Under the pieces are notes generated by a model. It made no database searches. It saw only the letters and a program-made list of their open reading frames with translations, and was not told the origin of the DNA. 64,000 bases of DNA, from positions 159,177-223,176 of the IMG/VR virus record IMGVR_UViG_3300028392_000029, one strand, 5' to 3'. Numbering within the stretch: the stretch's first letter is position 1; every line of letters begins with the position of its first letter. The position numbers and the translations under genes were made by a program. Shown here one piece after another: positions 2,396 to 31,613 of the stretch.

Positions 2396-2423
2396 ATTAT
2401 ACAGTGATTGTAACTAAAATCAA
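2396..2423 (-). promoter_or_regulatory. sigma70-type promoter (TTGATT-N16-TATAAT), leaderless transcript
   Basis: Minus strand TTGATTttagttacaatcactgTATAATacaaatATG. Confidence 0.55.
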
Positions 2424-10295: not shown

Positions 10296-12089
10296 TTACG
10301 GTGCTGGAGCCGGCGCCGCCTTTGGAAGTGAATCAATAGCAGTTTGTGCGGATTGTAATGCGGCGTTAATGCCGGCATCGTTGCCGTCATCTGGTAATTG
10401 AGCCATGATTTTTCTAATCTCGTCAACCATTGCTGTTTGTTCCGGTGTTGGTCCAACTGGCACTACAGGAGCTACTGGTTTGTTTGGATCTACTACTGGT
10501 TTATTTGGATCAACTGGTTTATTTGGATCAACTGGTTTATTTGGATCAACTGGTTTATTTGGATCAACTGATGGATCTGGACCTTGTCCTTTATTTGGAG
10601 TTAACGCAAGACCAGCGGCACCTCCTAATGCTGCCGCACCTAATGCAGTTTTAACTGGGTTCTTTGCAATTGCTGAACCTACGCCCATTCCTTTAAGTGC
10701 CGCATTTGAAGGAGCTCTTTCAGCGCCAGCTTTTGCCATTGCTTGCACCTGGGCAGGCGTATACTTTGCTACTTTGTTTGCTCCACGGCCAGTAGTTTGC
10801 GCCGCTAATTTGTCAGCTGACTTTTGAAAGGCAGCTTTGTCTACAGTATTAGCTAATCCTGGTTGGCCTTTCAACCCCTTCCAAGCCGCACTACCAAAGT
10901 CTGCTATATCACCAAAGATACCTTCATCTAGTGTTAATGGTTTGTTCTTTACACTTTCCCAGATGTGTTTTACTGTTGTAGTGTCTGTAACTAAGTCACC
11001 GTTGGTTCTATAAAAATTACCATCAGTGCCTAAGAAATATTCTTTGTCTAATGTTGACATAGCTTCTAACATTTCTAAACGATTGCGTAGACGAACAATA
11101 GACTCGGCAGCAGATTCTGCGGCAGGCATTGTGACTCCATATTGCTTCATAGCGGCTTGAGTCATCGGACCCATTTTGCCATCAGCTTTAATCTTAGCAC
11201 CTTTCTTGATTAGTTCATTTTGTACAGCAAATACTTTAGCATCTCCACCAGGTGGAACTGCAGGTTTACTATCAAACTCACCATGTTTGTAATCACGAGC
11301 TAAGTTGGCGGCATCTAATCCTAATGATGCGGCAGTGCCAATTCCTGGAACTAAACTAGCTAGACCACTGGCACCAGCCATACCGGCACCTAACCAATCA
11401 CCTTTCTTAGCGCGATTATACGCATCGGCAGCACCGAATGCTAAACCAACACCAGGGATAGCTTTGCCTAACATTTTACCAACACCTTTAGCGCCAGCGT
11501 ATGTTGCGCCACCGACGGCAGCTTGTTGTGCTAGGCTTGCTTCGCTTTCAGTTTGATAACCAAAACTCTCAATCAATCTACGCGAGTTAAAAGATTCCTT
11601 AACGGCTGCAGGAGTTTTTAATGATGCTTGTAATTTTTGTACTAGATCTGCCAACTTAGTCATGTTGGCTTGATTTTGCTCGTTACTGTTTAGTGTAGCA
11701 TTAGTTCTATCGCTTTGTGTTTGTACATCCTTGTCGTACTTACCACCACTTACGCCAAACAGTCTACCAAGGAATGAACTCTTGTTTGCATTCTTAGGAA
11801 CTAGACCTAAATTAGCTAATTTTTGGTCATCTTCTTTGCTAGCAGTAGTACTGATACGTGCTGTTGGCTGTCCGCCGTCGCTAGCCGGGTTTAATACAGC
11901 AGAAACATAGTTACCGCTTACTGGATCATACAATCCTGGCAAGCCGTTTTTCTCAGCCATCTGTTGTAGTGTAAGTGAACGAGCTTGTTCATTACTAGCA
12001 CCTTGTACGGCAGCTTCTACATCTCGCAATCTAATACCTTCGGATAGTTCGATTGCATCTAGTTTGTTCATTAATTCACGAATGTTCAT
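10296..12089 (-). CDS. Putative virion internal/ejection protein with a peptidoglycan-binding-like module
   Basis: Start MNIRELMNKL (12089); Gly/Ala-rich membrane-like segments; VQNELIKKGAKIKADGKMGPMTQAAM is PG_binding_1-like; VDPNKP repeats. Confidence 0.6.
   Translation of the reverse strand: MNIRELMNKLDAIELSEGIRLRDVEAAVQGASNEQARSLTLQQMAEKNGLPGLYDPVSGNYVSAVLNPASDGGQPTARISTTASKEDDQKLANLGLVPKNANKSSFLGRLFGVSGGKYDKDVQTQSDRTNATLNSNEQNQANMTKLADLVQKLQASLKTPAAVKESFNSRRLIESFGYQTESEASLAQQAAVGGATYAGAKGVGKMLGKAIPGVGLAFGAADAYNRAKKGDWLGAGMAGASGLASLVPGIGTAASLGLDAANLARDYKHGEFDSKPAVPPGGDAKVFAVQNELIKKGAKIKADGKMGPMTQAAMKQYGVTMPAAESAAESIVRLRNRLEMLEAMSTLDKEYFLGTDGNFYRTNGDLVTDTTTVKHIWESVKNKPLTLDEGIFGDIADFGSAAWKGLKGQPGLANTVDKAAFQKSADKLAAQTTGRGANKVAKYTPAQVQAMAKAGAERAPSNAALKGMGVGSAIAKNPVKTALGAAALGGAAGLALTPNKGQGPDPSVDPNKPVDPNKPVDPNKPVDPNKPVVDPNKPVAPVVPVGPTPEQTAMVDEIRKIMAQLPDDGNDAGINAALQSAQTAIDSLPKAAPAPAP
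10474..10566 (-). repeat. 18-bp tandem repeat encoding VDPNKP
   Basis: actggtttatttggatca in four perfect copies at 10495-10566, plus one degenerate 21-bp copy. Confidence 0.95.
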
Positions 12090-12090
12090 T

Positions 12091-13170
12091 TTATTTTCCT
12101 TTATTTGGTACACAGTTAGGTACTGACTTGCTGCCTTTTTTCTTTGTACCAACCATTTTATAACCTTTCCAGCACGGATCATTCATCATTTCATCTATGC
12201 CAGCAGGTATGTTTCTGCTGTTTGAGCCGCCGGCTCGACGTTTAGCACCCAATTCTCCTAGACCATGACTAATTTGTTCAATATTCATAGCAAGTTCGGG
12301 GAACAGCTTAGTAATATGTTGCCATATTCTAGGATCATCACTTTGAGCCTGTTCTGCTAGATCTTTTAATTGTCTACGAGCTCGCATAATGCGATACTCG
12401 ATACTACCTGGATTCGCACCTTTATGACTGTGAATAGTACTGGACATAGGGTTTTCACGATCAAAGTCTAATGGAGTTTCTGCCACATTACCTTGTAGAC
12501 CAGGGCCGCCTGGCCCAGGTTTAAATCCCATGTTGTCAGATAACCCTTCTTGCATGGTCTTTAACAGCTCTTGGGCTTTTTCAATGCTAATCATATAACG
12601 GCCGAGTCTGTTTGGATCAGCGGCTTTTTCTAACCACTCTTTACTATAACCAGTTGGTGCTGGAGTTGGAGCCGCCGACGGCACGACTGGTTGTTTACCT
12701 TGTTCTCTTGCTGTTAGTTCAGCCTGCGCATCAGCTACACTAACCATGTATCTTCCAAGTCTGTTTGGATCGGAGGCTTTGCGCAACCATTCTGTATCAA
12801 ACCCACTTAAATCGGCACCTTCTTTTATACGTTGCGTCGACTCTCTCATTAAGACACGTTCAGCAATAGTCTGAGCGTATTGTTTATACATTGTATTTTT
12901 TTGTGTCAATCTTTTGGTAGCATCTGTTTCAGCTTGATCAAAATACTTTCTGATACTCGATTCACGAGTAATATTTGAAACAGGAGTAGTAATAGGTTGG
13001 CCAACAACAGGTTGCTGATAGTGTTGCATTGCCATTTGTACTGGCAATGTTACTTTGTGTGGATTGCTGCCTTCGTTGATAATAGAAAGAAACTTGGACA
13101 TGCTATCAACGCCTTCCACAGGCTTCGAAGATGCCCCATCCATCGCCTGTAGAATACGTTTCATGTCCAT
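12091..13170 (-). CDS. Putative head-internal protein with a duplicated 30-aa module and a C-terminal CWKGY...PNCVP motif
   Basis: EWLxKAxDPNRLGRYMxS occurs twice; several [ILM]xE sites. Confidence 0.6.
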   Translation of the reverse strand: MDMKRILQAMDGASSKPVEGVDSMSKFLSIINEGSNPHKVTLPVQMAMQHYQQPVVGQPITTPVSNITRESSIRKYFDQAETDATKRLTQKNTMYKQYAQTIAERVLMRESTQRIKEGADLSGFDTEWLRKASDPNRLGRYMVSVADAQAELTAREQGKQPVVPSAAPTPAPTGYSKEWLEKAADPNRLGRYMISIEKAQELLKTMQEGLSDNMGFKPGPGGPGLQGNVAETPLDFDRENPMSSTIHSHKGANPGSIEYRIMRARRQLKDLAEQAQSDDPRIWQHITKLFPELAMNIEQISHGLGELGAKRRAGGSNSRNIPAGIDEMMNDPCWKGYKMVGTKKKGSKSVPNCVPNKGK

Positions 13171-13174
13171 TGTA

Positions 13175-14710
13175 TTAACCTAATAGACGCTTTGTTAATG
13201 CACGAATGCTAGCAACTTCACCTGATTCAGCAACCATAGTTCGCTCGTTTTGATTTAAACGACCTGTTAGTTCGCGCATACGTGATAAGTCAGAGGATTC
13301 GTTAGTGCCAATTGGATCTTTTTTGCCTGCTGGTGCTGGCATCATTGCTCCTAACTTCTTGGCTTCTTCAGCATCCTTAGCACCTGATGGATTTGGAACA
13401 ACGGTCAAATTCTCGTCTGTAATCTTTTCTTTCTTTTTCTTTTCAGCTAGATACGCTTGAGTTTCTTTGATGTTCTTCCACATAGCGGCAGCGGCAACCT
13501 TCTCACCTTTCTCACCGCCACCAGCAGCCTTGGCCACTTTGTCAAAACTCTTACCTGGCTTACCAATGTCGCCACCTGCTTTAGCTTTCTTAACTACAGC
13601 AGATTTTTTCTCTTTGCTTAGACCTGCGCTTGGTTTTGCGGCTTCCTTAACAGACTTTCCGCCTTTTTCATCTTTGCCAAGACGTCCGGCGATAACATCA
13701 CCACGTGTTACTTTGTCGTATGGTTTAGCGTTGTTGGCCAAGTTGCCATCGCCTTTCTTTTTAGCTTCGTCTAATTCAACTTCTTTTTCTTTCTTTGGCT
13801 TAGCAGGTGCACCGTCACGATTGTCAAACTTCTCGCTATCCTTCATACCCCATGTCTTAGCACTTTTAGGAGACATCTTTTGTGCAGGAGCTTTTTCTTT
13901 TTTCTCTGCGGCCGACTGCGATTTAGCATGGGTCTTAATACCCTTACCTGATTTAGCGTTCGAAGAGATTTCGTCGCCGTCGTCGTGATACGTAGTATTG
14001 GTATGCTTCATACCGGTATCAGTTTTAGTTGCTACACCTGTGCGTGTTTTAAATGTATCACCAGTCTTTGATTTGTCGGTAAATTCTTCATCTAAGTCTT
14101 CTTCACTGTCAGGAATACCATTGTGATTTTTATCTAAACGCTTGTGAGCGGCATGCATAGCTTTAGTTTTGCGATCGTAATCACCAGCCATTTTCTTAAC
14201 ATGATCTGGAATTGGCATCGCTTCGACATATACCATACCAGTACCACCACACTCTGTACATTGTTGCTCACCACCGCGCAACGGACCTTCCATTACTTTT
14301 TTATCTTTGGCTTTTTCAGCTTGAGTCTTTTTAAGATCTTTCATCTTAGATTTAGCTTCTGAAAGCAATTCTTTAATTTTCATACGTTGTCCTTCGCTTA
14401 ATGTATCGCTGTTATCTAAGTGTTTACCATATTCACTAAATTTCATCTCATATTCTAAGTAGTGGTATACTGATGCAATATAATCAGCGGCCTTAGTGAT
14501 CTTAGCTTGCACCCATGCTTCTAACTGATCATCGTCATGAACTTGTTTGAACAATTTCATGCTATAGTTAGCTAGTTTGTATAGATCAGCTTTGGCCATT
14601 GCGCCTTCGTGATCTAATTCATCACTGTGCAAGCCTACTACTGCTGACTGTTCAGTTGGGCTACTTTGTGGTTCCATTTCTGGGTTCATTTGGTCTAAAT
14701 CTGCTGGCAT
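13175..14710 (-). CDS. Lys-rich putative head-internal protein
   Basis: 511 aa; EGAMAKADLYK...LEAWVQAKIT domain, CTECGGTG, EF-hand-like DKNHNGIPD, many xxE cleavage-like sites; AGGAG-like SD and TAAATA upstream. Confidence 0.6.
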   Translation of the reverse strand: MPADLDQMNPEMEPQSSPTEQSAVVGLHSDELDHEGAMAKADLYKLANYSMKLFKQVHDDDQLEAWVQAKITKAADYIASVYHYLEYEMKFSEYGKHLDNSDTLSEGQRMKIKELLSEAKSKMKDLKKTQAEKAKDKKVMEGPLRGGEQQCTECGGTGMVYVEAMPIPDHVKKMAGDYDRKTKAMHAAHKRLDKNHNGIPDSEEDLDEEFTDKSKTGDTFKTRTGVATKTDTGMKHTNTTYHDDGDEISSNAKSGKGIKTHAKSQSAAEKKEKAPAQKMSPKSAKTWGMKDSEKFDNRDGAPAKPKKEKEVELDEAKKKGDGNLANNAKPYDKVTRGDVIAGRLGKDEKGGKSVKEAAKPSAGLSKEKKSAVVKKAKAGGDIGKPGKSFDKVAKAAGGGEKGEKVAAAAMWKNIKETQAYLAEKKKKEKITDENLTVVPNPSGAKDAEEAKKLGAMMPAPAGKKDPIGTNESSDLSRMRELTGRLNQNERTMVAESGEVASIRALTKRLLG

Positions 14711-14733
14711 GAGTATACTCCGTTATCTTTATA

Positions 14734-14739
14734 TATTTA
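14734..14739 (-). promoter_or_regulatory. TAAATA late-type promoter
   Basis: TAAATA overlaps the upstream stop codon, 24 nt before ATG 14710. Confidence 0.5.
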
Positions 14740-15213
14740 TCGTTTGATGCTTCCGCCAGTCATTAGATTCACATCTATATCTAGGGCGTTTTTAGCTGTG
14801 CCGTCTTTGTTTTTAGGCTGTTTTACTGGTTTATTCTTATATACCGGGCCTACTGATACATTAGCGGCACTGGTTGCTCCAGCGGTTGCTGATTCTGACA
14901 CATCTTCGGGTTTACCAAACGGATGTACTTCAATCCACTTGCCGCCTTCATTTTTAATCCATTTTTCCTGATGAAACTTACTTTTGACAATGCCGTGCAT
15001 TTTTAATGCCTGTTCAGGACTATCTCTAAATCCCTGTTGGCGAGCTTCATGTTCGCGATGGTTACTGATCATAGCTTGATGTAACCTACCATCTTTAAAA
15101 ATGTATAATAGATTTGATTCGTCTTCTGCAGGATTGCGGCGCTGACTACTAAATCCTGTGCGATTGTTATCGTAATTGTTATAGTGACCTTCGTCAAGTT
15201 CGTGCATTTTCAT
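14737..15213 (-). CDS. Putative head-internal protein (MKMHELDEG...ESATAGATSA)
   Basis: N-terminal tag shared with neighbouring genes. Confidence 0.6.
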   Translation of the reverse strand: MKMHELDEGHYNNYDNNRTGFSSQRRNPAEDESNLLYIFKDGRLHQAMISNHREHEARQQGFRDSPEQALKMHGIVKSKFHQEKWIKNEGGKWIEVHPFGKPEDVSESATAGATSAANVSVGPVYKNKPVKQPKNKDGTAKNALDIDVNLMTGGSIKR

Positions 15214-15214
15214 T

Positions 15215-15508
15215 TTATTTTCCTACAGGTTTTTCGCCAGTTAAGTACGGCTTACTAAACCACAGTTGAAACCATTCTGGGGTTCCGGGACGAATATGAT
15301 GCTTACGCTCTAGCTCTTGTTTGCTCATACCAGTAACACTGATATTACTGCCTTGATTAGCACGGTATTCGTGTAGTCTAGCTTCGCCACCTAACCCGCC
15401 TAGTCCTGCTAGTGCTTTCATTTCGTGTATAGGATCACTCGGATCTAAATAGCAGTCATCTGAACTATCTTGATTTAAATCCTGCGTAGTAATTCTATAC
15501 TGTTTCAT
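15215..15508 (-). CDS. Hypothetical protein (MKQYRIT...IRPGTPEWFQLWFSKPYLTGE)
   Basis: Start set at 15508, overlapping the dps stop. Confidence 0.65.
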   Translation of the reverse strand: MKQYRITTQDLNQDSSDDCYLDPSDPIHEMKALAGLGGLGGEARLHEYRANQGSNISVTGMSKQELERKHHIRPGTPEWFQLWFSKPYLTGEKPVGK

Positions 15509-15945
15509 TTTAAACTTGACCTCAGCATCCAACTGTGCTTCTTATGTGCATCCTGTCGATCAGCTAAGAAATTACTCAGCCCGTGGTCACCATGCGCTTC
15601 AGCCATATCAAACGTAATGCGAAATATCTCAGCCATTCTGTCACTATCTGTTAATAATTCTTTTAGCATACCGCTCCAATCTGGTACATGATTTTCATCT
15701 TCTACCACAGTCAGCATACTGAATTTTTGTAAACTAGCCGGTGTATAAATCTGTAGAGCACGTAGATGTTCCGCAAACGGATCAATTGCACCATATACTT
15801 CCTCGTATATGGTTTGAAACAGTTCGTGTAACTGACCAAACAACGGTCCTTCTACATTCCAGTGAAAGTTATGCGCTTTTAGATAAAAACTAAATTCACT
15901 AGCAAAAGCTGTTTTTAATGATAAGTGATATTTGTCGTGTTCCAT
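15505..15945 (-). CDS. dps: Dps family ferritin-like DNA-protection protein
   Basis: KAHNFHWNVEG, LHELF, D-x3-E ferroxidase residues, HKKHSWML. Confidence 0.92.
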   Translation of the reverse strand: MEHDKYHLSLKTAFASEFSFYLKAHNFHWNVEGPLFGQLHELFQTIYEEVYGAIDPFAEHLRALQIYTPASLQKFSMLTVVEDENHVPDWSGMLKELLTDSDRMAEIFRITFDMAEAHGDHGLSNFLADRQDAHKKHSWMLRSSLK

Positions 15946-17240
15946 TATATACCGTATTTGTTTCTTTTGGCTTTATTTACAGGGCTAGTTTTGTTAGTGT
16001 CAGCGGGCTCTTCGCTCTTGCTAAACTTGCTAATTGTTTTTCCATCAGTGGGGACAGTTTTCATAGCCGATCGAATCTTATTATCGTCTTCTTTGGTGTA
16101 AGGATGATGTGTATTATACTTTTCAGCCCAGGTATCTTGCGGACTGTCTACAGCTTTTATACTCTCGCCGTCGGCCATGGCCATGGCCATCATCATGCGA
16201 TTCATGTGATAGATACGATCGTACCCGCCGATATCGCGTGTTCGAATTACGCCCAGGCTGGCGGCATCGTGGTGGGGGTGTCGATGACTAGTTTTACCTT
16301 CGCGTACAAATTCGTTAGCTTTCATTTCTCTTAATACCCTGTTAGCTTCTTTAATCAAATTAAAGGCTTTTAAATTCTTTTTTGGTGTACTACTATTTAC
16401 ATCAACTGTACTATTCTGTTTTGTAATAGTGCCGACCCCGGCAGCTTCTTCGTCAGTTTTAGTATATACTTGTTGCGGTTTTTTATGCCCCTCACCTCGT
16501 TCCATTTTATCAGGATCTTTGGATTTTTCTTTTTCAAAGTACTTGCGCATTTCTTCTGCACTGGTCGTTGGCTTAGCTTTAACAGGTTTAGTCATGAATC
16601 CCATTAAGCCTTCATCAGTTACTGGTTCTGCTACAGGTTTTTCTTTTTTAGCTCGTTTTACTTTTTCAGGATGTTGGCCTACTGCGGCTACTACTGTATC
16701 AAAATAGTGTTGACCATTTACTTCTAGATTAGGATCTGTACCAGCGGCTCGATAAAATGCGTCCATGTTACCAGCACGAGCCGCATTGCGTAGATCAGTT
16801 GCTGAGCTTACTCTGGGACTTGGTATATGGATGATTTTAGCAAAGTTAAAATAACCATGTGTACTTTCCTTGCCATTGTATTGATTTAATAATTTTCCAG
16901 CCCATGCCCAGTCAGTTGCATCAGTTATATAAGCTACAGTTGCACCATCTCCAACTTCTGCATAAATCTTAGAGGCCAGTGTGATAACTGTAGATTCACC
17001 TAACACATGTCCTTCAATGCTGGGATCAATTGCAGACATCCATGCTGCCTTAACATCAAACGGCAACGGATCGTTGGTGCCGGTTGTACTAGGATTAGTA
17101 CCTATGTACCATTGATGACCTGCATGTTTAACAGCTTCCCAAACTTTGGCATGCCCTTGATGCGGTGGATTGAACCGACCAAAGCAGAATGCCGCAGTTA
17201 CCTTAGTATGAGTTGATTCAAAAAGTTCACGTAAATTCAT
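15945..17240 (-). CDS. HxGH cytidylyltransferase-like nucleotidyltransferase fused to a second capsid-tagged module
   Basis: FGRFNPPHQGH, DPLPF, VSSATDLRNAA; internal MKANEFVREG at 16325. Confidence 0.75.
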   Translation of the reverse strand: MNLRELFESTHTKVTAAFCFGRFNPPHQGHAKVWEAVKHAGHQWYIGTNPSTTGTNDPLPFDVKAAWMSAIDPSIEGHVLGESTVITLASKIYAEVGDGATVAYITDATDWAWAGKLLNQYNGKESTHGYFNFAKIIHIPSPRVSSATDLRNAARAGNMDAFYRAAGTDPNLEVNGQHYFDTVVAAVGQHPEKVKRAKKEKPVAEPVTDEGLMGFMTKPVKAKPTTSAEEMRKYFEKEKSKDPDKMERGEGHKKPQQVYTKTDEEAAGVGTITKQNSTVDVNSSTPKKNLKAFNLIKEANRVLREMKANEFVREGKTSHRHPHHDAASLGVIRTRDIGGYDRIYHMNRMMMAMAMADGESIKAVDSPQDTWAEKYNTHHPYTKEDDNKIRSAMKTVPTDGKTISKFSKSEEPADTNKTSPVNKAKRNKYGI

Positions 17241-18433
17241 TATGGTGTCCAGGCTGGTATAGTTCCAGACGGAGTTTCGATACTACTACGCGGAACTAGT
17301 TTAATATGATCATCACCTTTTTTATCGTAGTGTACCCAGCCCTCTGGGTTGGTTACTTTAATCTCACCGGGATCTTTATCTAATTGTGCAATTACACTGT
17401 TCTTCAATTGCATAATATCGTCAAACAAATTAAACATTGCAGGTAGTGCTCCTGGGAACATCTTTGCACGTTCTTGTACCTTAGCCAACTGTGTTGGACT
17501 TACAATTGTTGGATTAGATTCCATCCACATCATAAAATTATGACCGACATTGTGTAATTGTCCTTGCTTACTCATAGTATTAACATATCTGTAAACAATA
17601 TTTTTAAATCCACTTACTCCGGGTAGTGGTGATAAGAATTGATCAATTTCAGCTGAATGTTTTTTAATTTCTGCTTCAACAATAGATATAGCTTGAGAAT
17701 CAACTTCCGGCTGCATCTGGGTATAGTATGGACCTAGTACGATCAGTTGAGATGTTGAATTAAACTCTTCAAAACTGTCTTTGGGTTGTTGCGTATGGTC
17801 GGCGTCTCCGAATGTTTCAAATATGCCATGACCAACAACCATTGCATGCGCTGTAGAAATTTGTTGTCCTAGATCAGTATCCTGTGCAATATGATAAACT
17901 GTTCCGCTTTTTGGATTTGGATGTAAATTATATATTCCATCAGCATCTGGGGTTGGTTGCCCTAAGAATAACCCATCGGCGTAGACAAATCCTCTAAAAT
18001 CTTCAGGGGTAGCTTTTTCAAACACTGGATGTAAGAAACTAAATTCTCTAGCAAACTCTTTACGTTGCTCTTGTTCTTCGGGGGTCTTTGGATTACCACT
18101 CTTGTTAAGAATAAAATTATAAATTCCTTGCTGTGTGGTAAACTCGTCTAATGTACTTGTACCAGTGCCGCCACGCAACCAACCATTGTGGTTAGTCAAT
18201 ATAAATGTACCATTCTCATCTCTGCCCCAATACACTTGCGGAGCACCGTCCCACTTGTATCGAACACCCTTGGCATTTTTGCCTATGGCTTTGATATGTT
18301 CCAGCGCCTTAATTGCACCAGCACTGCCATTTAAAAATGTTAGATCCTCTGGATGATTGAATGCCCTACCTACTTTTTTCTTAACTTCTTCAGCGGCTGG
18401 GGCTTCTCTTAAAAATAATTCTCTTAGTAACAC
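17240..18433 (-). CDS. KxDG covalent nucleotidyltransferase (RNA-ligase-like; DUF6267-like)
   Basis: HPEDL, YKWDGAP (motif I), NPEGWV (motif IV), IKLVPR (motif V); GTG start, MLLRELF. Confidence 0.6.
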   Translation of the reverse strand: MLLRELFLREAPAAEEVKKKVGRAFNHPEDLTFLNGSAGAIKALEHIKAIGKNAKGVRYKWDGAPQVYWGRDENGTFILTNHNGWLRGGTGTSTLDEFTTQQGIYNFILNKSGNPKTPEEQEQRKEFAREFSFLHPVFEKATPEDFRGFVYADGLFLGQPTPDADGIYNLHPNPKSGTVYHIAQDTDLGQQISTAHAMVVGHGIFETFGDADHTQQPKDSFEEFNSTSQLIVLGPYYTQMQPEVDSQAISIVEAEIKKHSAEIDQFLSPLPGVSGFKNIVYRYVNTMSKQGQLHNVGHNFMMWMESNPTIVSPTQLAKVQERAKMFPGALPAMFNLFDDIMQLKNSVIAQLDKDPGEIKVTNPEGWVHYDKKGDDHIKLVPRSSIETPSGTIPAWTP

Positions 18434-18435
18434 GA

Positions 18436-18807
18436 TTAGTCCTTATACTTGCCATCGGCAACGTGCTTACAAGTTTCATCGTGTATTTTTTTACATACTT
18501 TACTGCAAAGTTCCTCATCTAATTCGTCTGGTAGTTCGCGAATCGGAAATTTTTTAATGTACAATTTATAGCTAGCCTGTACAGGCACCTTAAACATATT
18601 TGGATGTGTTGCACGATCAGCTTTCAAACGGTCTATGCACTTGGAAATAACTGGATGGACATGACGTCGATACGATCTGTCATCGTTATGCATAAAATGA
18701 ATTAAATCATCCGGAAGGTCGTAGTTAATCTCTCTGCCGTCATTCTTTGGCGAGACAAAGTCTAAATCTTTGAAGATGGTGCCTTCTAATAGCTCATTTA
18801 TGCGCAT
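18436..18807 (-). CDS. Putative head-internal protein (MRINELLEG)
   Basis: N-terminal tag; first gene after a TAAATA promoter. Confidence 0.65.
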   Translation of the reverse strand: MRINELLEGTIFKDLDFVSPKNDGREINYDLPDDLIHFMHNDDRSYRRHVHPVISKCIDRLKADRATHPNMFKVPVQASYKLYIKKFPIRELPDELDEELCSKVCKKIHDETCKHVADGKYKD

Positions 18808-18879: not shown

Positions 18880-19509
18880 CTATGCTTTAACGATACGTTC
18901 AATCTTTGTTATTACGCCACCGAGATGCATTTTAGTCAACAGTAGTGTATTGTCGCCTGTTACATAGAAGTGTGTTCCGCCCCAACTTCTTGATTTTCCT
19001 AGCTCTTTTTTGCAACTTTTAGTCAGTTTTAGTTTGTCACGGCCAGCCGCCCATTCAACAAACGCTTGATAATCTTGGTTAGTTTTACCTAAAGTCACTC
19101 GATAATCGTAATTTGTTTTAGGCATTATTATAGTATTAGCCGCTAGAGGTGAATCTTTTGGTGGCTCAGATATATATTTCACATTGCTACTATCTAATTT
19201 AGACAGCAGAGTAACATAATCAAGGTTGTTAGTATATACGCTGACCCACGGAGATTCTACCCTAATTTCTATATCCTTCATTTTCTTCAAGGCAGTTGCA
19301 AGTCTAATAGCATAATCTAGCTGATCTTGAGTTTTGATATTATTAATACGCCACACATCGTCGGGCTTTTGAAGTAAAGAAGTTTTACTTAGTAGTTTTA
19401 ATGCAGTTTCCATATCACCGCTTCTAAACGAACTAGCGCCAGAACATATCAACACAATTTTGTATTGATATGTTCCTTTAAATAAACTTCTAGTTGTTTT
19501 GTACAACAT
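18880..19509 (-). CDS. Hypothetical protein
   Basis: 209-aa ORF overlapping the end of clpA. Confidence 0.75.
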   Translation of the reverse strand: MLYKTTRSLFKGTYQYKIVLICSGASSFRSGDMETALKLLSKTSLLQKPDDVWRINNIKTQDQLDYAIRLATALKKMKDIEIRVESPWVSVYTNNLDYVTLLSKLDSSNVKYISEPPKDSPLAANTIIMPKTNYDYRVTLGKTNQDYQAFVEWAAGRDKLKLTKSCKKELGKSRSWGGTHFYVTGDNTLLLTKMHLGGVITKIERIVKA

Positions 19510-21763
19510 CTTCTAAGTTGCTCTCAATAGCCAGTAATGCAATTTTAGATACTTTTGGTTTAGCAATTAACGAAATTGCATCGCCATCAACACTAATAGT
19601 GACCCAGCCGCCATTTTTAAGATCTCCAAACAACATCAATCGAGCAAGGTCGCGTTTAATTTCCTTGTCAATAACACGCTGTAACGGACGAGCACCCATC
19701 TTAGGATCAAAGCCTTTTTCGATGAGCCAATTAACTGCTTCCTTATCGATCTTAACTCGGATACCTTTATCTTTAACTTGGTCTTTAAGTTGATCTATAA
19801 ACTTATTAACAATTTTTATCATTGTTTCTTTTCCAAGTTTATTAAATGTAACAACACCATCTAAACGATTGCGGAACTCCGGAGTTAAGAATTTCTTCAA
19901 ATCAGCATCGCTATAGTCTTTATCTTGCTTACCAAATCCAATAGCATTTTTGTCTGCTGATTGTGCTCCGGCATTAGTAGTAAGGATAAGAACAATATTA
20001 CGGCAGTCAGCTTTTTTGCCATTTGATCCGGTAATAAATCCGTTATCCATAAGCTGTAGCAATACAGTTATTACATCTGGATGCGCTTTTTCAATCTCAT
20101 CTAGCAACAGTACAGCATTAGGTGCTTCTTGAATACTGGTAATTAGTTGACCCGCATTTTCTTCAAATCCAACATAACCGGGAGGGCTGCCGATCAACTT
20201 ACTGATACTGTGTTTTTCTTGATATTCACTCATATCAAAGCGCAGTAACTTAACACCCAAGTTTTTAGCAAGTGACTTAGCAGTTTCGGTTTTACCAGTA
20301 CCAGTCGGCCCCATGAATACAAACGATCCAACGGGTTTATTTTCTGTTTTAAGTCCAGCCTGTGCAACAACAATCTTATCAACGATTTCGGTGATAGCAA
20401 GTTCTTGCCCATACACTTCTGTTTCAAGTTTAGTTTGTAAACTAATTAAATTAACACTTTCAGTTTCTGAAACTTGCTCTTCCGGCATATTGACCATCTT
20501 AGCTAGTTCGAATTGAATTTCACGCTCGCCGATAATGCGCTCATCAGCTAGTTTGAGATTGAAGCGTGAGCAAGCTACATCAATTAAATCAATGGCCTTG
20601 TCCGGAAGTTTTTTATCTGTTTGATACTTAACTGACAATTTAATTGCCGCATCAATTGCATCGTCCTTGATCTTAACATTATGGAATCCTTCGTAGTATT
20701 TCTTAATACCTTTAAGGATCTGTTTAGTAACTTCTGTTGTAGGCTCGTCAACAGTAATGCGTTGGAAACGACGCATGAGCGCACGATCCTTTTCGAAGTG
20801 CTTACGATATTCTTCCCAGGTAGTCGATGCTACAACTTTAATATTGCCTTTGCTTAGTGCAGGCTTCATCATGTTGGCAAGATCGTTCGCTGAATTGCTT
20901 GCCGACCCAGCACCACTAATCATGTGTGCTTCGTCAATAAACAAGACAGTCTTACCTTTCTTTTGTAGGGCTTTAATAACATGCTTAAAGCGTTCTTCAA
21001 AGTCTCCGCGATATTTAGAGCCAGCTAACATAGCACTGATGTCTAGATTATAAACTGTATACTCTTTCAAGAAATCAGGAACAGCACCATTTACAATATT
21101 ATGAGCCATGCCCTCGGCGATCGCAGTCTTACCTACACCAGGGTCACCAACTAAGATCACGTTGTTTTTGCTACGACGACCTAGTGCTAACGCAATATTT
21201 TCTAATTCGTCAACTCTGCCAATAACTGGATCGATTTTGTTTTTCTTAACTTCTTGATTCAGATTAGTAGTAAATGCCTGAAGGGCTTTATCACTATGCG
21301 AATCAGCTGGGCTATCGTCCGGACCATTTTCCATATTATTATTTAAATATTCAGCAAATTTATCTTTATCGATATTAGCTTGTGCAACAAAAAAGTGCGC
21401 CCAACTACGTTTCTCGCCCATCATAGCCAAGAATACATCCGTTGGTTCAATACGCTGTCGCCCGTTGAATAGGACTTGAGTAAACGCCCTATTAAGTACA
21501 CGCTCTACACTTTGAGTTTTCTTAGGTTTAACCACTACATCTGGTACTGTAATTTCACTACATTTATTATGTAGATAATCTTGTAGGTTTGTTTTAAGGG
21601 AATTAGCATCAGCGCCGAATCCTTGAATACAGTTAGTAAACCCATCTTCTGCAAGCATAGCAAACAACAGATGTTCTATTGTTAGATATTCGTGATGAAG
21701 TTTTTTAGAAGTTTCTATAGCTCTTTCAAAGACTGCTTGAAGATTATCGCTAGGTTCGACCAT
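19490..21763 (-). CDS. clpA: ATP-dependent Clp protease ATP-binding subunit ClpA
   Basis: Clp N domain, GDPGVGKT, KYRGDFEER, GPTGTGKT, DMSEYQEKH, IGF ClpP-docking loop, GARPL. Confidence 0.95.
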   Translation of the reverse strand: MVEPSDNLQAVFERAIETSKKLHHEYLTIEHLLFAMLAEDGFTNCIQGFGADANSLKTNLQDYLHNKCSEITVPDVVVKPKKTQSVERVLNRAFTQVLFNGRQRIEPTDVFLAMMGEKRSWAHFFVAQANIDKDKFAEYLNNNMENGPDDSPADSHSDKALQAFTTNLNQEVKKNKIDPVIGRVDELENIALALGRRSKNNVILVGDPGVGKTAIAEGMAHNIVNGAVPDFLKEYTVYNLDISAMLAGSKYRGDFEERFKHVIKALQKKGKTVLFIDEAHMISGAGSASNSANDLANMMKPALSKGNIKVVASTTWEEYRKHFEKDRALMRRFQRITVDEPTTEVTKQILKGIKKYYEGFHNVKIKDDAIDAAIKLSVKYQTDKKLPDKAIDLIDVACSRFNLKLADERIIGEREIQFELAKMVNMPEEQVSETESVNLISLQTKLETEVYGQELAITEIVDKIVVAQAGLKTENKPVGSFVFMGPTGTGKTETAKSLAKNLGVKLLRFDMSEYQEKHSISKLIGSPPGYVGFEENAGQLITSIQEAPNAVLLLDEIEKAHPDVITVLLQLMDNGFITGSNGKKADCRNIVLILTTNAGAQSADKNAIGFGKQDKDYSDADLKKFLTPEFRNRLDGVVTFNKLGKETMIKIVNKFIDQLKDQVKDKGIRVKIDKEAVNWLIEKGFDPKMGARPLQRVIDKEIKRDLARLMLFGDLKNGGWVTISVDGDAISLIAKPKVSKIALLAIESNLEDVVQNN

Positions 21764-22248
21764 TATTTAAATTTCCTTTGTTTTTTCTGTGCCATTTTTA
21801 ATTTCAAATCACTTACATATTCTGTAAATGTTATTCCATCTAAGTGATCTAATTCGTGTTGAAAACAACGAGAGTCGATTCCTTCAAGTTCTATTATACA
21901 TTGTTTTCCTGCGCTGTCAAGATACATGGCAGTAATTTTGTCACTTCTTTTGACTTTAAGCCAGAGATTTGGAAAACTTAAACACCCTTCGTCAGCTTGT
22001 ACATCTGCGTTGTCGCCGACTAGAATAGTAGGATTGAAAACCCCAAGTTCTCTACCGTCTTGTAGTTTCATCACAAATACTCTACGCAACAACCCAACTT
22101 GATTGCCAGCAAGTCCGATACCGTTATGTGCTCGCATGAGTTCAAGCATTTCTCTTTCTATAACATCCGCATTAACATGGTTTTTAAAATCCCAACGTTC
22201 TGCTTTTTGTTTAAGAATTGGATCAGGATCTTGAATTAATTTCAACAT
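21763..22248 (-). CDS. def: Peptide deformylase
   Basis: GIGLAGNQVG, EGCLS, HELDH. Confidence 0.95.
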   Translation of the reverse strand: MLKLIQDPDPILKQKAERWDFKNHVNADVIEREMLELMRAHNGIGLAGNQVGLLRRVFVMKLQDGRELGVFNPTILVGDNADVQADEGCLSFPNLWLKVKRSDKITAMYLDSAGKQCIIELEGIDSRCFQHELDHLDGITFTEYVSDLKLKMAQKKQRKFK

Positions 22249-23080
22249 CTAGTGCTTTAAGTTTTTCTATTAATGATGGATCTGTAATTGCCGGTGTTTT
22301 AATATTTACAACAATTACTAGCCGACCTTTCTGACCAGTATTAATATTAGGGAATCCGTGCCCAGAGCTTGCAAATTCAGATCCAGCTTCAATACCTGGA
22401 CGAATATCAAGATCTATTTTTTGGCCGGTTATAGTTTTAACACCTTTACTACAACCGATCATAGCCTCGATCGGTGTTATGTACACTGTAGTATACATAT
22501 CGTCTCCGGCACGCCTAAAGTTGCTATCAGGAAGCACAATAATAGTTACATTTAAATTTCCTCTCGGAGCATTAGGAACACTATCGTCACCTAATCCATT
22601 ATATCGTATAGTTTCACCATGACTTATTCCAGCCGGAACATTAATAACTACAGTCTGCGTTTGCCCGCTCGGCATTTTATAATTTGCTTCTAGTTGTTTT
22701 CCTAGATAGCTGTCTAATATTGAAACTTGACATTGGATGTTTAGATCTCGATTTCTGCGCATCTGCGCATGTCCGCCGCCGAACATGCTAGTAAATGGGT
22801 GCCCTTGCGGGAATCCTTGTCCAAACATCGCGCCAAATGGATCAAATCCATCTGTAGTAAATCTTACTTGCGGGCCACCTCCGAACATACGTTGTTGGTC
22901 GTATTCAGCTTTCTTTTGTGGGTCGCTTAGGTTATCGTATGCAACGCTAATATCTTTGAATTTGGCTTGATCACCACCCTTGTCCGGGTGATGTTTATTA
23001 GCCAAGCTTCGGTATGCTTTTTTAATTTCATCTGGGCTAGCGTTTTCGCCAACACCTAGTGTTTGGTAATAATCTGTCAT
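22223..23080 (-). CDS. dnaJ: DnaJ class II co-chaperone (no zinc finger)
   Basis: J-domain with HPD, G/F-rich linker, C-terminal DnaJ domain. Confidence 0.9.
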   Translation of the reverse strand: MTDYYQTLGVGENASPDEIKKAYRSLANKHHPDKGGDQAKFKDISVAYDNLSDPQKKAEYDQQRMFGGGPQVRFTTDGFDPFGAMFGQGFPQGHPFTSMFGGGHAQMRRNRDLNIQCQVSILDSYLGKQLEANYKMPSGQTQTVVINVPAGISHGETIRYNGLGDDSVPNAPRGNLNVTIIVLPDSNFRRAGDDMYTTVYITPIEAMIGCSKGVKTITGQKIDLDIRPGIEAGSEFASSGHGFPNINTGQKGRLVIVVNIKTPAITDPSLIEKLKALDVEINSRS

Positions 23081-31028: not shown

Positions 31029-31613
31029 TTAGTATTCGCCGCTCAGTTTGATATATACGTTAGCTCCGGCATCAACAGACCATGCTTCAATGACTTCAAG
31101 TTTAGTTGAACCAATTGCACCAACTGTGAATGGGCTAAATCCAGTTGCAAAACGCACAACTCCGCCGTTGGCAGTGGCAAATACTGGTGTTCTAACAGCA
31201 ATAGTGTCGCCTTTCAAAATAACTCTAATAATTCCGTATGCAGGTACCGCAGGCCAGCCGGTAAAAGTTAATGTAGCATTTCCTGCGAGTGTAAATTGTT
31301 GTATAGATCCGTTGGCCAAGTTAATATTTGCAGTAGTAGATACAGTTCCACCGGGGTAGAATATACCGTAAAATTGATTATGTGTACCGTTTGTGATAGA
31401 ACTTTGTAACAGATTATTTACTACAGGAGTGGTACCAGTTGCTAGATCTGCTTTTAATAGTGTATTAGTTTGTAGTGCAGTAATTTCAGACTTGGCTACT
31501 CCTAATCCCGCTGAAATAGCAGTAAAGTTGTTACGAAATCCCTGACTATCGTTGTCCTGCCCTGCTACAGGGTAAGTTGTGTTAATTGAGATATAGTTTA
31601 TTTGACTTGTCAT
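31029..31613 (-). CDS. Virion structural protein (tail/baseplate)
   Basis: YPVAGQDNDSQGFRNNF N-terminus, coiled coil, beta-rich C-terminus. Confidence 0.65.
   Translation of the reverse strand: MTSQINYISINTTYPVAGQDNDSQGFRNNFTAISAGLGVAKSEITALQTNTLLKADLATGTTPVVNNLLQSSITNGTHNQFYGIFYPGGTVSTTANINLANGSIQQFTLAGNATLTFTGWPAVPAYGIIRVILKGDTIAVRTPVFATANGGVVRFATGFSPFTVGAIGSTKLEVIEAWSVDAGANVYIKLSGEY

What the first reader, a model, noticed from the sequence alone, without database searches (positions are those of the whole stretch)
15945..18433. Coupled pair of tagged nucleotidyltransferases: KxDG ligase-like and HxGH cytidylyltransferase-like
Seen: the genes are joined by TAATG and both begin MxLRELF. 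One has covalent nucleotidyltransferase motifs I, IV and V (KWDG, EGWV, IKLV); the other has FGRFNPPHQGH and an SSAT motif. Inference: an injected two-enzyme module, for example tRNA/RNA repair against anticodon nucleases, NAD rebuilding against NAD-depleting defences, or synthesis of a nucleotide signal. The substrate cannot be read from the sequence.
Basis: partly seen in the sequence, partly recalled or inferred. Interest (0 to 1): 0.65.

Follow-up and report, generated by a model that had tools for sequence, protein, structure and literature searches.

The report
Capsid-tagged ligase-like and adenylyltransferase gene pair
Two overlapping genes of a large T4-like phage encode a very divergent ligase-type enzyme and an NMN-adenylyltransferase-type enzyme; both start with a short leader like the one T4 uses to load proteins into its head, and related phages repeatedly fuse the two, so they probably work together as a nucleic-acid break-repair kit delivered with the DNA.

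Summary
ORF A (17240-18433, minus strand, GTG start) is a DUF6267 protein with invariant KWDG, EG and K-x-V-P-R motifs. Its model matches RNA and DNA ligases only moderately (best Z 7.1), and no sequence method links it to them. ORF B (15945-17240) has a solid HxGH nucleotidyltransferase domain, closest to NadM and archaeal NMNAT (Z 14.8), followed by a disordered modular tail.

The two genes are functionally linked. They are adjacent in 49 of 74 related loci and in cyanophages at about 25% identity. They are also fused in several domain orders, often with a third enzyme, a Pol-beta-type nucleotidyltransferase.

The MxLRELF leader is a peptide-level signal shared by unrelated neighbouring genes. 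It resembles the T4 IPII/IPIII and gp24 propeptides and ends in the hydrophobic-x-Glu site that gp21 cleaves. The genome encodes a gp21-type protease. A leader-bearing cyanophage homologue of ORF B has been found in purified virions.

The most likely reading is a head-packaged module that extends and seals broken polynucleotide ends, with RNA somewhat favoured over DNA. The substrate, Lys adenylylation and packaging are all untested. I rate it a new variant of known kinds and moderately interesting.

The parts
17240..18433 (-). ORF A: 397-aa DUF6267 protein, a ligase-like (covalent nucleotidyltransferase-type) enzyme with a GTG start
   Evidence: ORF listing. Pfam PF19782 at E 6e-16. AF2 model with pLDDT 88.5. 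The top 27 rows of an exhaustive fold search are all ligases or capping-type proteins, best Z 7.1.
18404..18433 (-). ORF A leader MLLRELFLRE|A (residues 1-10), a candidate capsid-targeting propeptide with L8-x-E10
   Evidence: E5 is invariant and a hydrophobic-x-Glu follows in homologues. pLDDT is below 50. Compare T4 IPII/IPIII MKTYQEFIAE|A and gp24 MAKINELLRE|S and the gp21 cleavage rule L/I-x-E (PMC9026906).
18341..18370 (-). Invariant N-terminal motif GRAFNHPEDL (residues 22-31), family signature [FY]-x-H-x-E-D
   Evidence: Invariant in alignment A1. H, E and D are invariant in 64 distant fusion proteins. It resembles the T4 Rnl2 N-terminus KYSSLEN; that comparison is by eye only.
18245..18256 (-). 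Motif I KWDG (K60 is the putative nucleotidyl-accepting lysine)
   Evidence: Invariant. Also present in P-HM1 and S-SZBM1 homologues.
17333..17344 (-). Motif IV EGWV (residues 364-367)
   Evidence: E364 and G365 are invariant. The only hhalign local match to Rnl2 puts this motif on Rnl2 motif IV, EGYV 204-207, but the match is not significant.
17288..17305 (-). Motif V IKLVPR (residues 377-382)
   Evidence: K378, V380, P381 and R382 are invariant. This Lys is invariant in distant fusions.
17238..17242 (-). TAATG stop/start overlap joining ORF A and ORF B
   Evidence: Read directly from the sequence. The same tight junction occurs in relatives L007, L009 and L010.
15945..17240 (-). ORF B: 431-aa protein made of leader, HxGH nucleotidyltransferase domain and variable tail
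17217..17240 (-). ORF B leader MNLRELFE|S (residues 1-8)
   Evidence: M1, L3 and E8 are at least 90% conserved in 25 homologues.
16656..17207 (-). HxGH (cytidylyltransferase-like) nucleotidyltransferase domain, residues 12-195. It includes FGRFNPPHQGH (17151-17183) and SSAT (16797-16808).
   Evidence: PF01467 at E 2e-5. phrog_3041 and phrog_395 'cytidyltransferase'. pLDDT above 90. Foldseek match to NadM at E 1e-5. VIA Z 14.8 for NadM, 13.0 for archaeal NMNAT and 12.7 for PPAT.
15948..16655 (-). ORF B C-terminal half (residues 196-431): low-confidence, modular, variable region
   Evidence: pLDDT is mostly below 50. The region varies between homologues. Residues 344-431 are a separate leader-bearing gene in L009:8475-8894. 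Some homologues carry sigma-70 region 4 here instead.
18436..18807 (-). Conserved 123-aa leader-bearing protein (MRINELLEG...) immediately upstream of ORF A; function unknown
   Evidence: Homologues occur in L009, L007 and L010. No family match.
10296..12089 (-). 597-aa leader-bearing protein (MNIRELMNKL...) with an endolysin/peptidase-like segment; belongs to the same tagged cluster
   Evidence: The ATG at 12089 lies 1 nt after the stop codon of the gene upstream of it.
14737..15213 (-). 158-aa protein (MKMHELDEG...) carrying an internal copy of the major-capsid-protein cleavage junction (VSE|SATAGATSAANV)

Best explanation
The pair is the two-gene form of a conserved phage enzyme module.

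Shown by sequence, fold or comparison:
- ORF A (DUF6267) is a highly divergent member of the lysine-nucleotidyltransferase (ligase) fold. It has a helical insert and no OB domain.
- ORF B carries an HxGH nucleotidyltransferase domain of the NadM/archaeal-NMNAT type.
- In related phages these two, plus a roughly 230-aa Pol-beta-type nucleotidyltransferase, sit next to each other or are fused into one polypeptide in several orders.
- Both proteins, and several unrelated neighbours, start with a roughly 8-10-residue leader that resembles T4 capsid-targeting and propeptide sequences and ends in a hydrophobic-x-Glu site.

Inferred:
- The leader loads the enzymes into the prohead core.
- The phage's gp21-type protease removes it.
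- The mature enzymes leave the head with the DNA.
- In the cell they act on broken polynucleotide ends. The Pol-beta enzyme (elsewhere in the genome) and/or the HxGH enzyme add or activate nucleotides at the ends, and K60 of ORF A takes up AMP and seals a 3'-OH/5'-phosphate break.

RNA (for example tRNA cut by host nucleases) is somewhat more likely than DNA as the substrate.
For: Ligase-like:
- Motifs I, IV and V and an H-x-E-D motif are invariant across 26 close and 64 distant homologues.
- The motifs occur in the canonical order on beta-strands of a confident model.
- Rows 1-27 of an exhaustive comparison with 48,161 chains are all covalent-nucleotidyltransferase-fold proteins (RNA ligases, DNA ligases, one capping enzyme and snurportin's cap-binding domain). 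The best are NgrRnl Z 7.1, T4 Rnl2 Z 6.4 and Trl1 Z 6.2. Foldseek independently ranks ligases at the top.

HxGH.

Coupling:
- TAATG overlap.
- ORF B's homologue lies directly downstream in 49 of 74 IMG/VR loci that have room for it, and in L007, L009 and L010.
- The same adjacency holds in cyanophages P-HM1 and S-SZBM1 at about 25% identity.
- Among the top 150 family representatives the fusions are duf-nt 10, pb-duf-nt at least 13, nt-pb-duf 3, and pb-duf or duf-pb about 23.
- An atlas cluster combines DUF6267 and CTP_transf_like.

Repair logic:
- The Pol-beta catalytic triad is invariant, and an atlas neighbour cluster carries NTP_transf_2.
- A HAD protein next to the pair in L007 and L010 hits the 'polynucleotide kinase' PHROG at E 1e-4.
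- The published paradigm is RNA ligase + RlaP Pol-beta nucleotidyltransferase + HAD phosphatase in jumbo phages (PMC7824862, PMC12776372).
- A 96%-complete relative also has a canonical ATP-dependent DNA ligase, so DUF6267 is not its only ligase.

Packaging:
- Leader enrichment of 26% versus 1%.
- T4 IPII/IPIII, IPI and gp24 N-termini and the gp21 rule.
- Peptidase_S77 at E 6e-27 with scaffold and gp23-like genes, and a leader-bearing small ORF beside them.
- The S-SZBM1 cytidylyltransferase starts MRFRQFIIE|A and was detected in CsCl-purified virions.
- The S-SM2 homologue starts MKSFFQFLSE|A.
Against: - No sequence method links ORF A to any ligase family. Pfam and NCBIfam give nothing, and hhalign against Rnl2 gives probability below 1%.
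- Fold Z-scores of 5-7 lie in the range the tool warns can be a common arrangement.
- I could not inspect residue-level superposition of K60 on a catalytic lysine.
- The role of an HxGH enzyme in end repair has no precedent.
- No kinase or 2',3'-cyclic phosphodiesterase was seen.
- The Pol-beta partner and the HAD protein are absent from this 223-kb fragment.
- There are no virion data for this phage.
- Cyanophage DUF6267 homologues lack the leader, and S-SZBM1_141 was not among the 30 virion proteins reported.
- The leader has Arg or Asn at position 4, where T4 needs an aromatic residue.
- Fusions to SOD and sigma-70 domains show that some fusions in these phages may reflect co-packaging rather than shared chemistry.
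Confidence: 0.45

Rival explanations
1. DNA version. DUF6267 is a DNA nick-sealing ligase. In cyanophages it would be the 'missing' replicative ligase. Here it would be a head-packaged ligase that, with Dps- or SOD-type neighbours, repairs or circularises the incoming genome. The HxGH partner would supply NAD+ or another adenylate donor.
For: The complete cyanophage genomes P-HM1 and S-SZBM1 have no PF01068 or PF01653 ligase but do have DUF6267, inside the replication/recombination block (uvsX, gp41, mazG ... primase). DUF6267 occurs in 469 phage records, mostly T4-like cyanophages. DNA ligases score within 1-2 Z units of RNA ligases. A Dps-like gene lies next to ORF B, DUF6267-SOD fusions exist, and SOD genes neighbour DUF6267 in some loci. 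The variable domain order recalls LigD.
Against: There is no OB domain; the protein ends 15 residues after motif V. The best fold matches are RNA ligases. The 96%-complete relative keeps a canonical ATP-dependent DNA ligase as well. No NAD-ligase Ia-type feature was found.
Confidence: 0.2
2. NAD+ supply or rebuilding. ORF B is a true NMN adenylyltransferase injected to keep NAD+ up against NAD-depleting defences. ORF A uses NAD+, or makes it by reversing ligase step 1.
For: The best structural matches of ORF B are NMNATs: NadM Z 14.8 and archaeal NMNAT Z 13.0, against PPAT Z 12.7. The GRFxPxHxGH and SxTxxR motifs are of the NadM/archaeal type (motif typing from my own knowledge). Some sources name homologues NMNAT. 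Phage NAD+ reconstitution pathways are known (Osterman 2024, cited in PMC12801897).
Against: ORF B scores 12-15 bits against NMNAT equivalog models whose cut-offs are 112-210 bits. No Nampt/NAPRTase is present in this fragment or in the 96%-complete relative. This reading does not explain the Pol-beta fusion partner.
Confidence: 0.12
3. The leader is not a capsid-targeting signal. The enzymes would act only in the cytoplasm of the producing cell, and the shared N-terminus would serve another purpose, such as recognition by the adjacent phage ClpA/DnaJ chaperones or a translation-initiation preference.
For: The DnaJ, deformylase and ClpA-like block is conserved just upstream of the tagged cluster. 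There is no proteomic evidence for this phage. Cyanophage DUF6267 lacks the leader and was not seen in virions.
Against: The leader is close to T4 gp24, IPI and IPII/IPIII propeptides, including the hydrophobic-x-Glu site at positions 8-10. A gp21-type protease is present. The same leader sits on a small ORF inside the head-morphogenesis block. A leader-bearing homologue was detected in virions. No ClpP is present in the fragment. The codons are not conserved, so this is not an mRNA element.
Confidence: 0.25
4. The module makes a small nucleotide product, such as a dinucleotide, a capped nucleotide or a signal, rather than repairing polymers.
For: Three nucleotidyl-transfer domains sit in one polypeptide. 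HxGH enzymes normally act on small phosphorylated molecules.
Against: No nucleotide-signal synthase or known small-molecule pathway uses a ligase-fold enzyme. The neighbouring Pnkp-like HAD protein points to polymer ends.
Confidence: 0.05

Closest known systems
ATP-dependent RNA ligases of the Rnl2/Rnl5/Trl1 type (T4 Rnl2, Naegleria NgrRnl, fungal Trl1 LIG domain)
   Same: They share KxDG, EG-x-V and K-x-(K/V) motifs in the same order. They are the best structural matches (Z 7.1, 6.4 and 6.2 over 168-189 residues). Neither has an OB domain. ORF A has an N-terminal [FY]xxLE[ND]-like motif about 30 residues before the lysine, as does Rnl2.
   Different: No detectable sequence homology. ORF A has a roughly 110-residue helical insert between the central strands and motif IV. 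The second motif V lysine is replaced (K-L-V-P-R). There is no Rnl2-type C-terminal domain. ORF A carries an N-terminal leader.
NadM / archaeal NMN adenylyltransferases (HxGH nucleotidyltransferases)
   Same: Same fold (Z 14.8 and 13.0) and the GRFxPxHxGH and SxTxxR motifs.
   Different: Identity is 12-17%. ORF B is far below the NMNAT model cut-offs. It has no Nudix domain. It carries a leader and a 235-residue disordered modular tail.
T4 internal head proteins IPI/IPII/IPIII and Alt, and the gp24 propeptide (capsid-targeting sequences cleaved by gp21)
   Same: A short shared N-terminal leader sits on otherwise unrelated proteins, with hydrophobic-x-Glu at its end (MLLRELFLRE|A against MKTYQEFIAE|A and MAKINELLRE|S). 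A relative has MKTFKELFES against T4 IPI MKTFKEFTST. The genome encodes a gp21-type protease.
   Different: The cargo here is 40-50 kDa nucleotidyltransferases rather than small basic inhibitors or an ADP-ribosyltransferase. Position 4 is basic, not aromatic. Packaging and cleavage have not been shown.
RNA ligase + RlaP (Pol-beta nucleotidyltransferase) + HAD phosphatase RNA-repair systems of jumbo phages and bacteria
   Same: A ligase-type enzyme is linked or fused to a template-independent Pol-beta nucleotidyltransferase, with a HAD phosphatase nearby in relatives (PMC7824862, PMC12776372).
   Different: The ligase is DUF6267, not Rnl1, Rnl2 or RtcB. The Pol-beta domain does not match PF10127. 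There is an extra HxGH enzyme. The proteins carry capsid-type leaders. No kinase is present.
Cyanomyovirus 'cytidylyltransferase' (T4-GC 190) and the adjacent hypothetical protein (T4-GC 71)
   Same: They are homologues of ORF B and ORF A, adjacent in P-HM1, S-SZBM1 and others. The transferase bears a T4-like leader and is a virion protein in S-SZBM1.
   Different: Identity is about 25-30%. The cyanophage DUF6267 has no leader. The two genes are not adjacent in all cyanophages. Neither has a described function.

Membership tests
Covalent (lysine) nucleotidyltransferase superfamily: ATP/NAD ligases and capping enzymes | Motif I KxDG with an invariant lysine | tested here: met
   K60, W61, D62 and G63 are invariant in 26 homologues, and K, D and G are invariant in 64 distant homologues.
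Covalent (lysine) nucleotidyltransferase superfamily: ATP/NAD ligases and capping enzymes | Motifs III, IIIa, IV and V downstream in canonical order on beta-strands | tested here: inconclusive
   Motif IV (E364, G365) and motif V (K378) are invariant and lie on strands 366-368 and 377-379. The candidates for III (YAD153) and IIIa (T178-x-Y180) were assigned by eye. The second motif V lysine is absent.
Covalent (lysine) nucleotidyltransferase superfamily: ATP/NAD ligases and capping enzymes | Nucleotidyltransferase-domain fold | tested here: inconclusive
   Rows 1-27 of 48,161 chains all have the covalent-nucleotidyltransferase fold, but Z is only 4.7-7.1 at rmsd 4-5 A. Foldseek gives E 0.04-1.
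Covalent (lysine) nucleotidyltransferase superfamily: ATP/NAD ligases and capping enzymes | Formation of a covalent enzyme-NMP intermediate | not testable with these tools
   Needs labelled ATP, NAD+ or GTP and a K60A control.
Rnl2 family (PF09414) | Profile-level sequence homology | tested here: not met
   There is no Pfam hit in 26 members even at E 10. hhalign gives probability below 1%, and only EGWV aligns with EGYV.
ATP-dependent DNA ligases / capping enzymes | OB-fold domain after motif V | tested here: not met
   The protein ends 15 residues after motif V, and the model shows only short strands there.
HxGH (cytidylyltransferase-like) nucleotidyltransferases | (H/T)xGH motif, SxTxxR motif and Rossmann-type fold | tested here: met
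   H27, G29, H30, S146, A147 and R151 are invariant. PF01467 scores above its cut-off. Z is 12-15 to NMNAT and PPAT.
NMN/NaMN adenylyltransferase (NadM, NadD, NadR equivalogs) | Score above the curated family cut-off | tested here: not met
   ORF B scores 12-15 bits against cut-offs of 112-210 bits.
T4-type capsid-targeted internal head proteins | Short N-terminal leader shared by unrelated proteins and ending in L/I-x-E | tested here: met
   E5 (ORF A family) and E8 (ORF B family) are conserved. The cleavage rule is from PMC9026906.
T4-type capsid-targeted internal head proteins | gp21-type prohead protease and T4-type head module in the same genome | tested here: met
   PF03420 at E 6e-27 and phrog_207 at E 3e-59, with scaffold and gp23-like genes. 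The relative G001 has them too.
T4-type capsid-targeted internal head proteins | Presence in virions with the leader removed | not testable with these tools
   The only evidence is indirect: the S-SZBM1 homologue of ORF B is in the virion proteome (PMC9146016).
Rnl-RlaP RNA-repair systems | Pol-beta nucleotidyltransferase partner of family PF10127 | tested here: not met
   A Pol-beta-type partner exists in relatives and in fusions, but it does not match PF10127 and is absent from this fragment.
NARP2-type NAD+ reconstitution (Nampt + Nmnat) | Nampt/NAPRTase partner gene | tested here: not met
   No PF04095 in this fragment or in the 96%-complete relative.

The most novel reading that the evidence does not exclude
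DUF6267 is a previously unrecognised family of polynucleotide ligases, present in most T4-like cyanophages and many marine and freshwater jumbo phages. It works with a Pol-beta nucleotidyltransferase and an HxGH adenylyltransferase as a three-enzyme extend/activate-and-seal machine. In this lineage the machine is preloaded into the capsid through T4-like targeting leaders, so that break repair (for example of nuclease-cut tRNA) is available before any phage gene is expressed.
Probability: 0.3. Interest if true: 0.8.

Novelty: new variant of a known kind. Interest (0 to 1): 0.6.

Why it matters
Three consequences would follow if this reading is right.

- It would give a function to two of the most widespread uncharacterised genes of oceanic T4-like phages, DUF6267 and the 'cytidylyltransferase'.
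- It would add a new ligase family and an unexpected HxGH partner to phage nucleic-acid repair.
- It would extend the T4 idea of capsid-targeted, injected proteins from small inhibitors to a multi-enzyme repair kit.

It also bears on a known gap: the two complete cyanomyovirus genomes checked here (P-HM1, S-SZBM1) have no recognisable DNA ligase. Every element can be tested with standard biochemistry and virion proteomics in cultured cyanophages.

Tried and rejected
- blastn of the region against 50,697 phage records found no match.
- phmmer and profile searches of ORF A, ORF B and the Pol-beta domain against PDB sequences gave nothing meaningful.
- A Pfam scan of 26 DUF6267 members at E 10 found no ligase family. 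NCBIfam found none either.
- hhalign of DUF6267 profiles against T4 Rnl2, as a single sequence and as a 120-sequence alignment, gave probability below 1%.
- Complex prediction of ORF A 20-397 with ORF B 1-196 returned no verdict (score 0.00). This counts neither for nor against binding.
- The T4 late-promoter motif TATAAATA is not enriched: 2 found against 8 expected.
- The leader-bearing 79-aa ORF beside the protease shows no BLAST similarity to T4 gp68.
- I considered that the 3934-aa ORF might be an N4-type injected RNA polymerase. It matches tail-fibre families instead.
- I considered that the leader might be a copied DNA cassette. The codons differ, so I rejected this.
- Literature searches for DUF6267 and for 'cytitidyltransferase' found no papers.
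- The read-mapping tools were not used.

Full report
**Context**

The window is the last 64 kb of a 223,176-bp IMG/VR virus record that CheckV estimates at about 60% complete. It is a large T4-like phage. Evidence for that:
- a family-B DNA polymerase (phrog_262, E 1e-198) and a clamp loader;
- a gp21-type prohead protease (PF03420, E 6e-27; phrog_207, E 3e-59), followed on the coding strand by a scaffold-like gene and the start of a gp23-like capsid gene;
- giant tail-fibre-like structural proteins.

All genes around the finding are on the minus strand.

**Observation**

ORF A runs from 17240 to 18433 (397 aa). It starts at GTG with AAGGA six bases upstream, two bases after the stop of the preceding gene. 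ORF B runs from 15945 to 17240 (431 aa). The junction reads cca-TAATG-aat, so the stop and the start share a base.

The proteins begin MLLRELFLRE and MNLRELFEST.

**ORF A**

Pfam places ORF A in DUF6267 (PF19782, E 6e-16), and nothing else matches. The family is large: more than 580 clusters in the word search and 906 representatives at 50% identity in the exhaustive profile search. As far as labelled, it is viral.

In 26 homologues the following are invariant:
- G22, R23, F25, N26, H27, E29, D30, L31;
- K60, W61, D62, G63;
- Y151, A152, D153;
- E364, G365;
- K378, V380, P381, R382.

In 64 much more distant multidomain members, H-x-E-D, K-x-D-G and the motif V lysine remain invariant.

An AF2 model is confident (pLDDT 88.5, pTM 0.85) except for residues 2-21. 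In it the conserved motifs lie on consecutive beta-strands in the canonical ligase order. A helical insert (residues 246-353) precedes motif IV, and there is no domain after motif V.

Foldseek gives only weak hits, but they are ligases. In the exhaustive VIA comparison with 48,161 chains, rows 1-27 all have the ligase/capping-enzyme nucleotidyltransferase fold:
- NgrRnl, Z 7.1;
- T4 Rnl2, Z 6.4 and 6.0;
- Trl1, Z 6.2;
- REL1, Z 5.8;
- DNA ligases, about Z 5.5;
- vaccinia capping enzyme, Z 4.7.

The Z values are moderate, and the tool warns that such values can reflect a common arrangement. Profile-profile comparison with Rnl2 is not significant; its only local match places EGWV on Rnl2's motif IV EGYV. 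I therefore call ORF A ligase-like by motifs and fold. It is not a demonstrated member of any described ligase family.

**ORF B**

Residues 12-195 form a confident HxGH nucleotidyltransferase domain (PF01467; phrog 'cytidyltransferase'). Structural matches are NadM (Z 14.8 and 13.8), archaeal NMNAT (Z 13.0) and PPAT (Z 12.7). Against NMNAT equivalog models it scores only 12-15 bits, where the cut-offs are 112-210 bits. The substrate is therefore open.

Residues 196-431 are poorly modelled and vary between homologues. Residues 344-431 correspond to a separate, leader-bearing gene in relative L009, where the transferase gene is only 192 codons long. Other homologues carry sigma-70 region 4 or short cysteine modules in this position.

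**Linkage**

The order DnaJ, deformylase, ClpA-like, small genes, DUF6267, HxGH transferase is kept in three distant metagenomic relatives. In each, the two genes abut or overlap.

Of 80 IMG/VR loci, 74 have room downstream of DUF6267. In 49 of these the transferase follows immediately. The other 25 form a clade in which a Pol-beta-type gene precedes DUF6267 instead.

In cyanophage P-HM1, the homologue of ORF A (25% identity, 91% coverage) is followed directly by a 'cytidyltransferase'. The same holds in S-SZBM1. DUF6267 occurs in 469 phage records and the transferase in 566, mostly T4-like cyanophages. In some of them the two genes lie far apart.

The strongest evidence is fusion. Among the top 150 family representatives I found these architectures with my own HMMs:

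| Architecture | Count |
|---|---|
| DUF6267 alone | 101 |
| pb-duf (including one pb-pb-duf) | 25 |
| duf-nt | 10 |
| pb-duf-nt | 6 |
| duf-pb | 5 |
| nt-pb-duf | 3 |

Here duf is DUF6267, nt is the HxGH domain and pb is a roughly 230-residue domain. Pfam then found a CTP_transf_like domain in the tails of seven more 'pb-duf' proteins. An ESM-Atlas cluster also combines DUF6267 and CTP_transf_like.

The pb domain has the invariant G-[ST]...S-G-D-x-D ... Q-x-D signature of Pol-beta-superfamily nucleotidyltransferases, and an atlas neighbour cluster carries NTP_transf_2. It is absent from this 223-kb fragment. It is present, unlinked, in a 96%-complete 356-kb relative.

Several independent fusion orders argue that the three enzymes act on one substrate. 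There is one caveat: DUF6267-SOD and transferase-sigma fusions show that some fusions in these phages may reflect co-packaging rather than shared chemistry.

**The tag**

In this genome fragment a strict pattern finds the leader on six ORFs. Four of them are true N-termini within window 10296-18807: a peptidase/endolysin-like protein, ORF B, ORF A and a 123-aa protein. One is internal to the ORF at 13175-14710. One sits on a small ORF about 1.1 kb upstream (in the direction of transcription) of the prohead protease gene.

Across 84 related loci the leader heads 26% of coding-strand ORFs against 1% of opposite-strand ORFs. The codons differ between ORF A and ORF B, so the similarity is in the peptide.

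Comparison with T4 sequences read from NC_000866:

| Protein | N-terminus |
|---|---|
| T4 IPII/IPIII | MKTYQEFIAE\|A |
| T4 IPI | MKTFKEFTST |
| T4 gp24 | MAKINELLRE\|S |
| ORF A | MLLRELFLRE\|A |
| ORF B | MNLRELFE\|S |
| Upstream 123-aa gene | MRINELLE\|G |
| Gene in relative L007 | MKTFKELFES |

According to PMC9026906, gp21 cleaves after L/I-x-E. The first ten residues of IPIII suffice for capsid targeting, and residues 8 and 10 govern processing. ORF A has L8-x-E10. A hydrophobic-x-Glu is conserved after the leader in both families (E5 invariant in the ORF A family, E8 at least 90% conserved in the ORF B family).

A neighbouring 158-aa protein contains VSE|SATAGATSAANV. This copies the capsid protein's own junction YLAE|SATAGATSAGNV.

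The cyanophage transferases start MKSFFQFLSE|A (S-SM2) and MRFRQFIIE|A (S-SZBM1). The S-SZBM1 protein was the one enzyme detected by LC-MS in CsCl-purified virions. The adjacent DUF6267 protein, which has no leader, was not reported (PMC9146016).

I put the probability that the leader is a prohead-core targeting propeptide at about 0.65-0.7. It has not been shown for this phage.

**Function**

The published paradigm for jumbo phages is an RNA ligase working with the Pol-beta enzyme RlaP, which adds one or two nucleotides to damaged RNA 3' ends, and with HAD phosphatases (PMC7824862, PMC12776372, PMC9503650).

The DUF6267 module parallels this. It has a ligase-type enzyme fused or linked to a Pol-beta nucleotidyltransferase. 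In relatives L007 and L010 a leader-bearing HAD protein nearby hits the 'polynucleotide kinase' PHROG at E 1e-4. The pb domain is not PF10127, and no canonical RNA ligase, RlaP or Tpt1 is present in the fragment.

Three things favour RNA over DNA:
- RNA ligases give the best fold matches;
- there is no OB domain;
- the near-complete relative also carries a canonical ATP-dependent DNA ligase.

Three things favour DNA:
- the complete cyanophage genomes P-HM1 and S-SZBM1 have no recognisable DNA ligase but do have DUF6267, inside their replication block;
- the neighbours include Dps- and SOD-type genes;
- the enzymes would be co-packaged with the genome.

NAD+ rebuilding is weakened by the absence of Nampt/NAPRTase and by the sub-threshold NMNAT scores. 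The role of the HxGH enzyme remains the least explained part. It could supply an adenylate donor such as NAD+, or it could adenylylate a 5'-phosphate end.

**Verdict**

The 'coupled pair' claim is well supported. The 'ligase-like' and 'injected' claims are plausible and better grounded than before, but both remain inferences. The substrate is unresolved.

The pair belongs to known but uncharacterised families (DUF6267 and the cyanophage 'cytidylyltransferase'), and it works like known heal-and-seal systems. Three points go beyond what I could find described:
- the ligase-fold assignment for DUF6267;
- the recurrent three-enzyme fusions that include an HxGH domain;
- the capsid-type leaders on these enzymes.

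The read-mapping tools were not used.

Noticed in passing
window 41863-53667 (-): A 3934-aa ORF matches giant tail-fibre/short-tail-fibre PHROGs (E 2e-62 and 3e-51). It is structural, not an N4-type virion RNA polymerase.
   Followed up: partly
window 31610-35803 (-): A 1397-aa protein has a full animal haem peroxidase domain (E 3e-114) plus He_PIG Ig-like domains. It sits among structural genes, which is unusual for a phage.
   Followed up: no
window 19490-23080 (-): A block of DnaJ, peptide deformylase and a ClpA/B-like double AAA+ ATPase lies directly upstream of the tagged cluster and is conserved in three distant relatives. No ClpP is present in the 223-kb fragment.
   Followed up: partly
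window 14737-15213 (-) and L005:3-242: The 158-aa protein contains ...DVSE|SATAGATSAANV..., nearly identical to the propeptide junction ...YLAE|SATAGATSAGNV... of the phage's gp23-like capsid protein. It looks like a borrowed protease site.
   Followed up: partly
window 12091-13170 (-) C-terminus; P-HM1 PHM1_163; several ORF B homologues: Two short cysteine modules recur at the ends or linkers of unrelated proteins in these phages. One is CW(K/T)GYKxxGTKxKGxKxVPNCV. The other is WSxKYKRSINCxNPKGFSQRAHCQGRKK, which is inserted right after the leader in some DUF6267 homologues.
   Followed up: no
window 15948-16209 (ORF B residues 344-431) and L009:8475-8894: The C-terminal part of ORF B is a separate, leader-bearing 139-aa gene in a relative whose transferase gene is only 192 codons long. 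ORF B is therefore a composite.
   Followed up: partly
P-HM1 (NC_015280), S-SZBM1 (OL473597), G001 (356-kb relative): The two complete cyanophage genomes have no PF01068 or PF01653 DNA ligase but do have DUF6267 within their replication block. The 96%-complete jumbo relative has both a canonical ATP-dependent ligase and DUF6267.
   Followed up: partly
ESM-Atlas cluster; L062:5122-6249, L086:5107-6234: DUF6267 is fused to Cu/Zn superoxide dismutase in one cluster and is followed by an Fe/Mn-SOD-like gene in some loci. Here a Dps/ferritin-like gene (15505-15945) follows ORF B. This suggests an oxidative-damage theme, or simply a shared packaged-protein cluster.
   Followed up: no
window 2420-3640 (-) and 61916-63277 (-): Tryptophan-halogenase-like (phrog_2928, E 2e-71) and radical-SAM-like genes, which look like auxiliary metabolic genes.
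   Followed up: no
L007:8467-10161, L010:8378-9772: A leader-bearing protein in relatives combines an N-terminal DxDxT HAD domain (weak 'polynucleotide kinase' PHROG hit) with a metallopeptidase-like HExxH segment and a cysteine module. It is absent from this fragment.
   Followed up: partly
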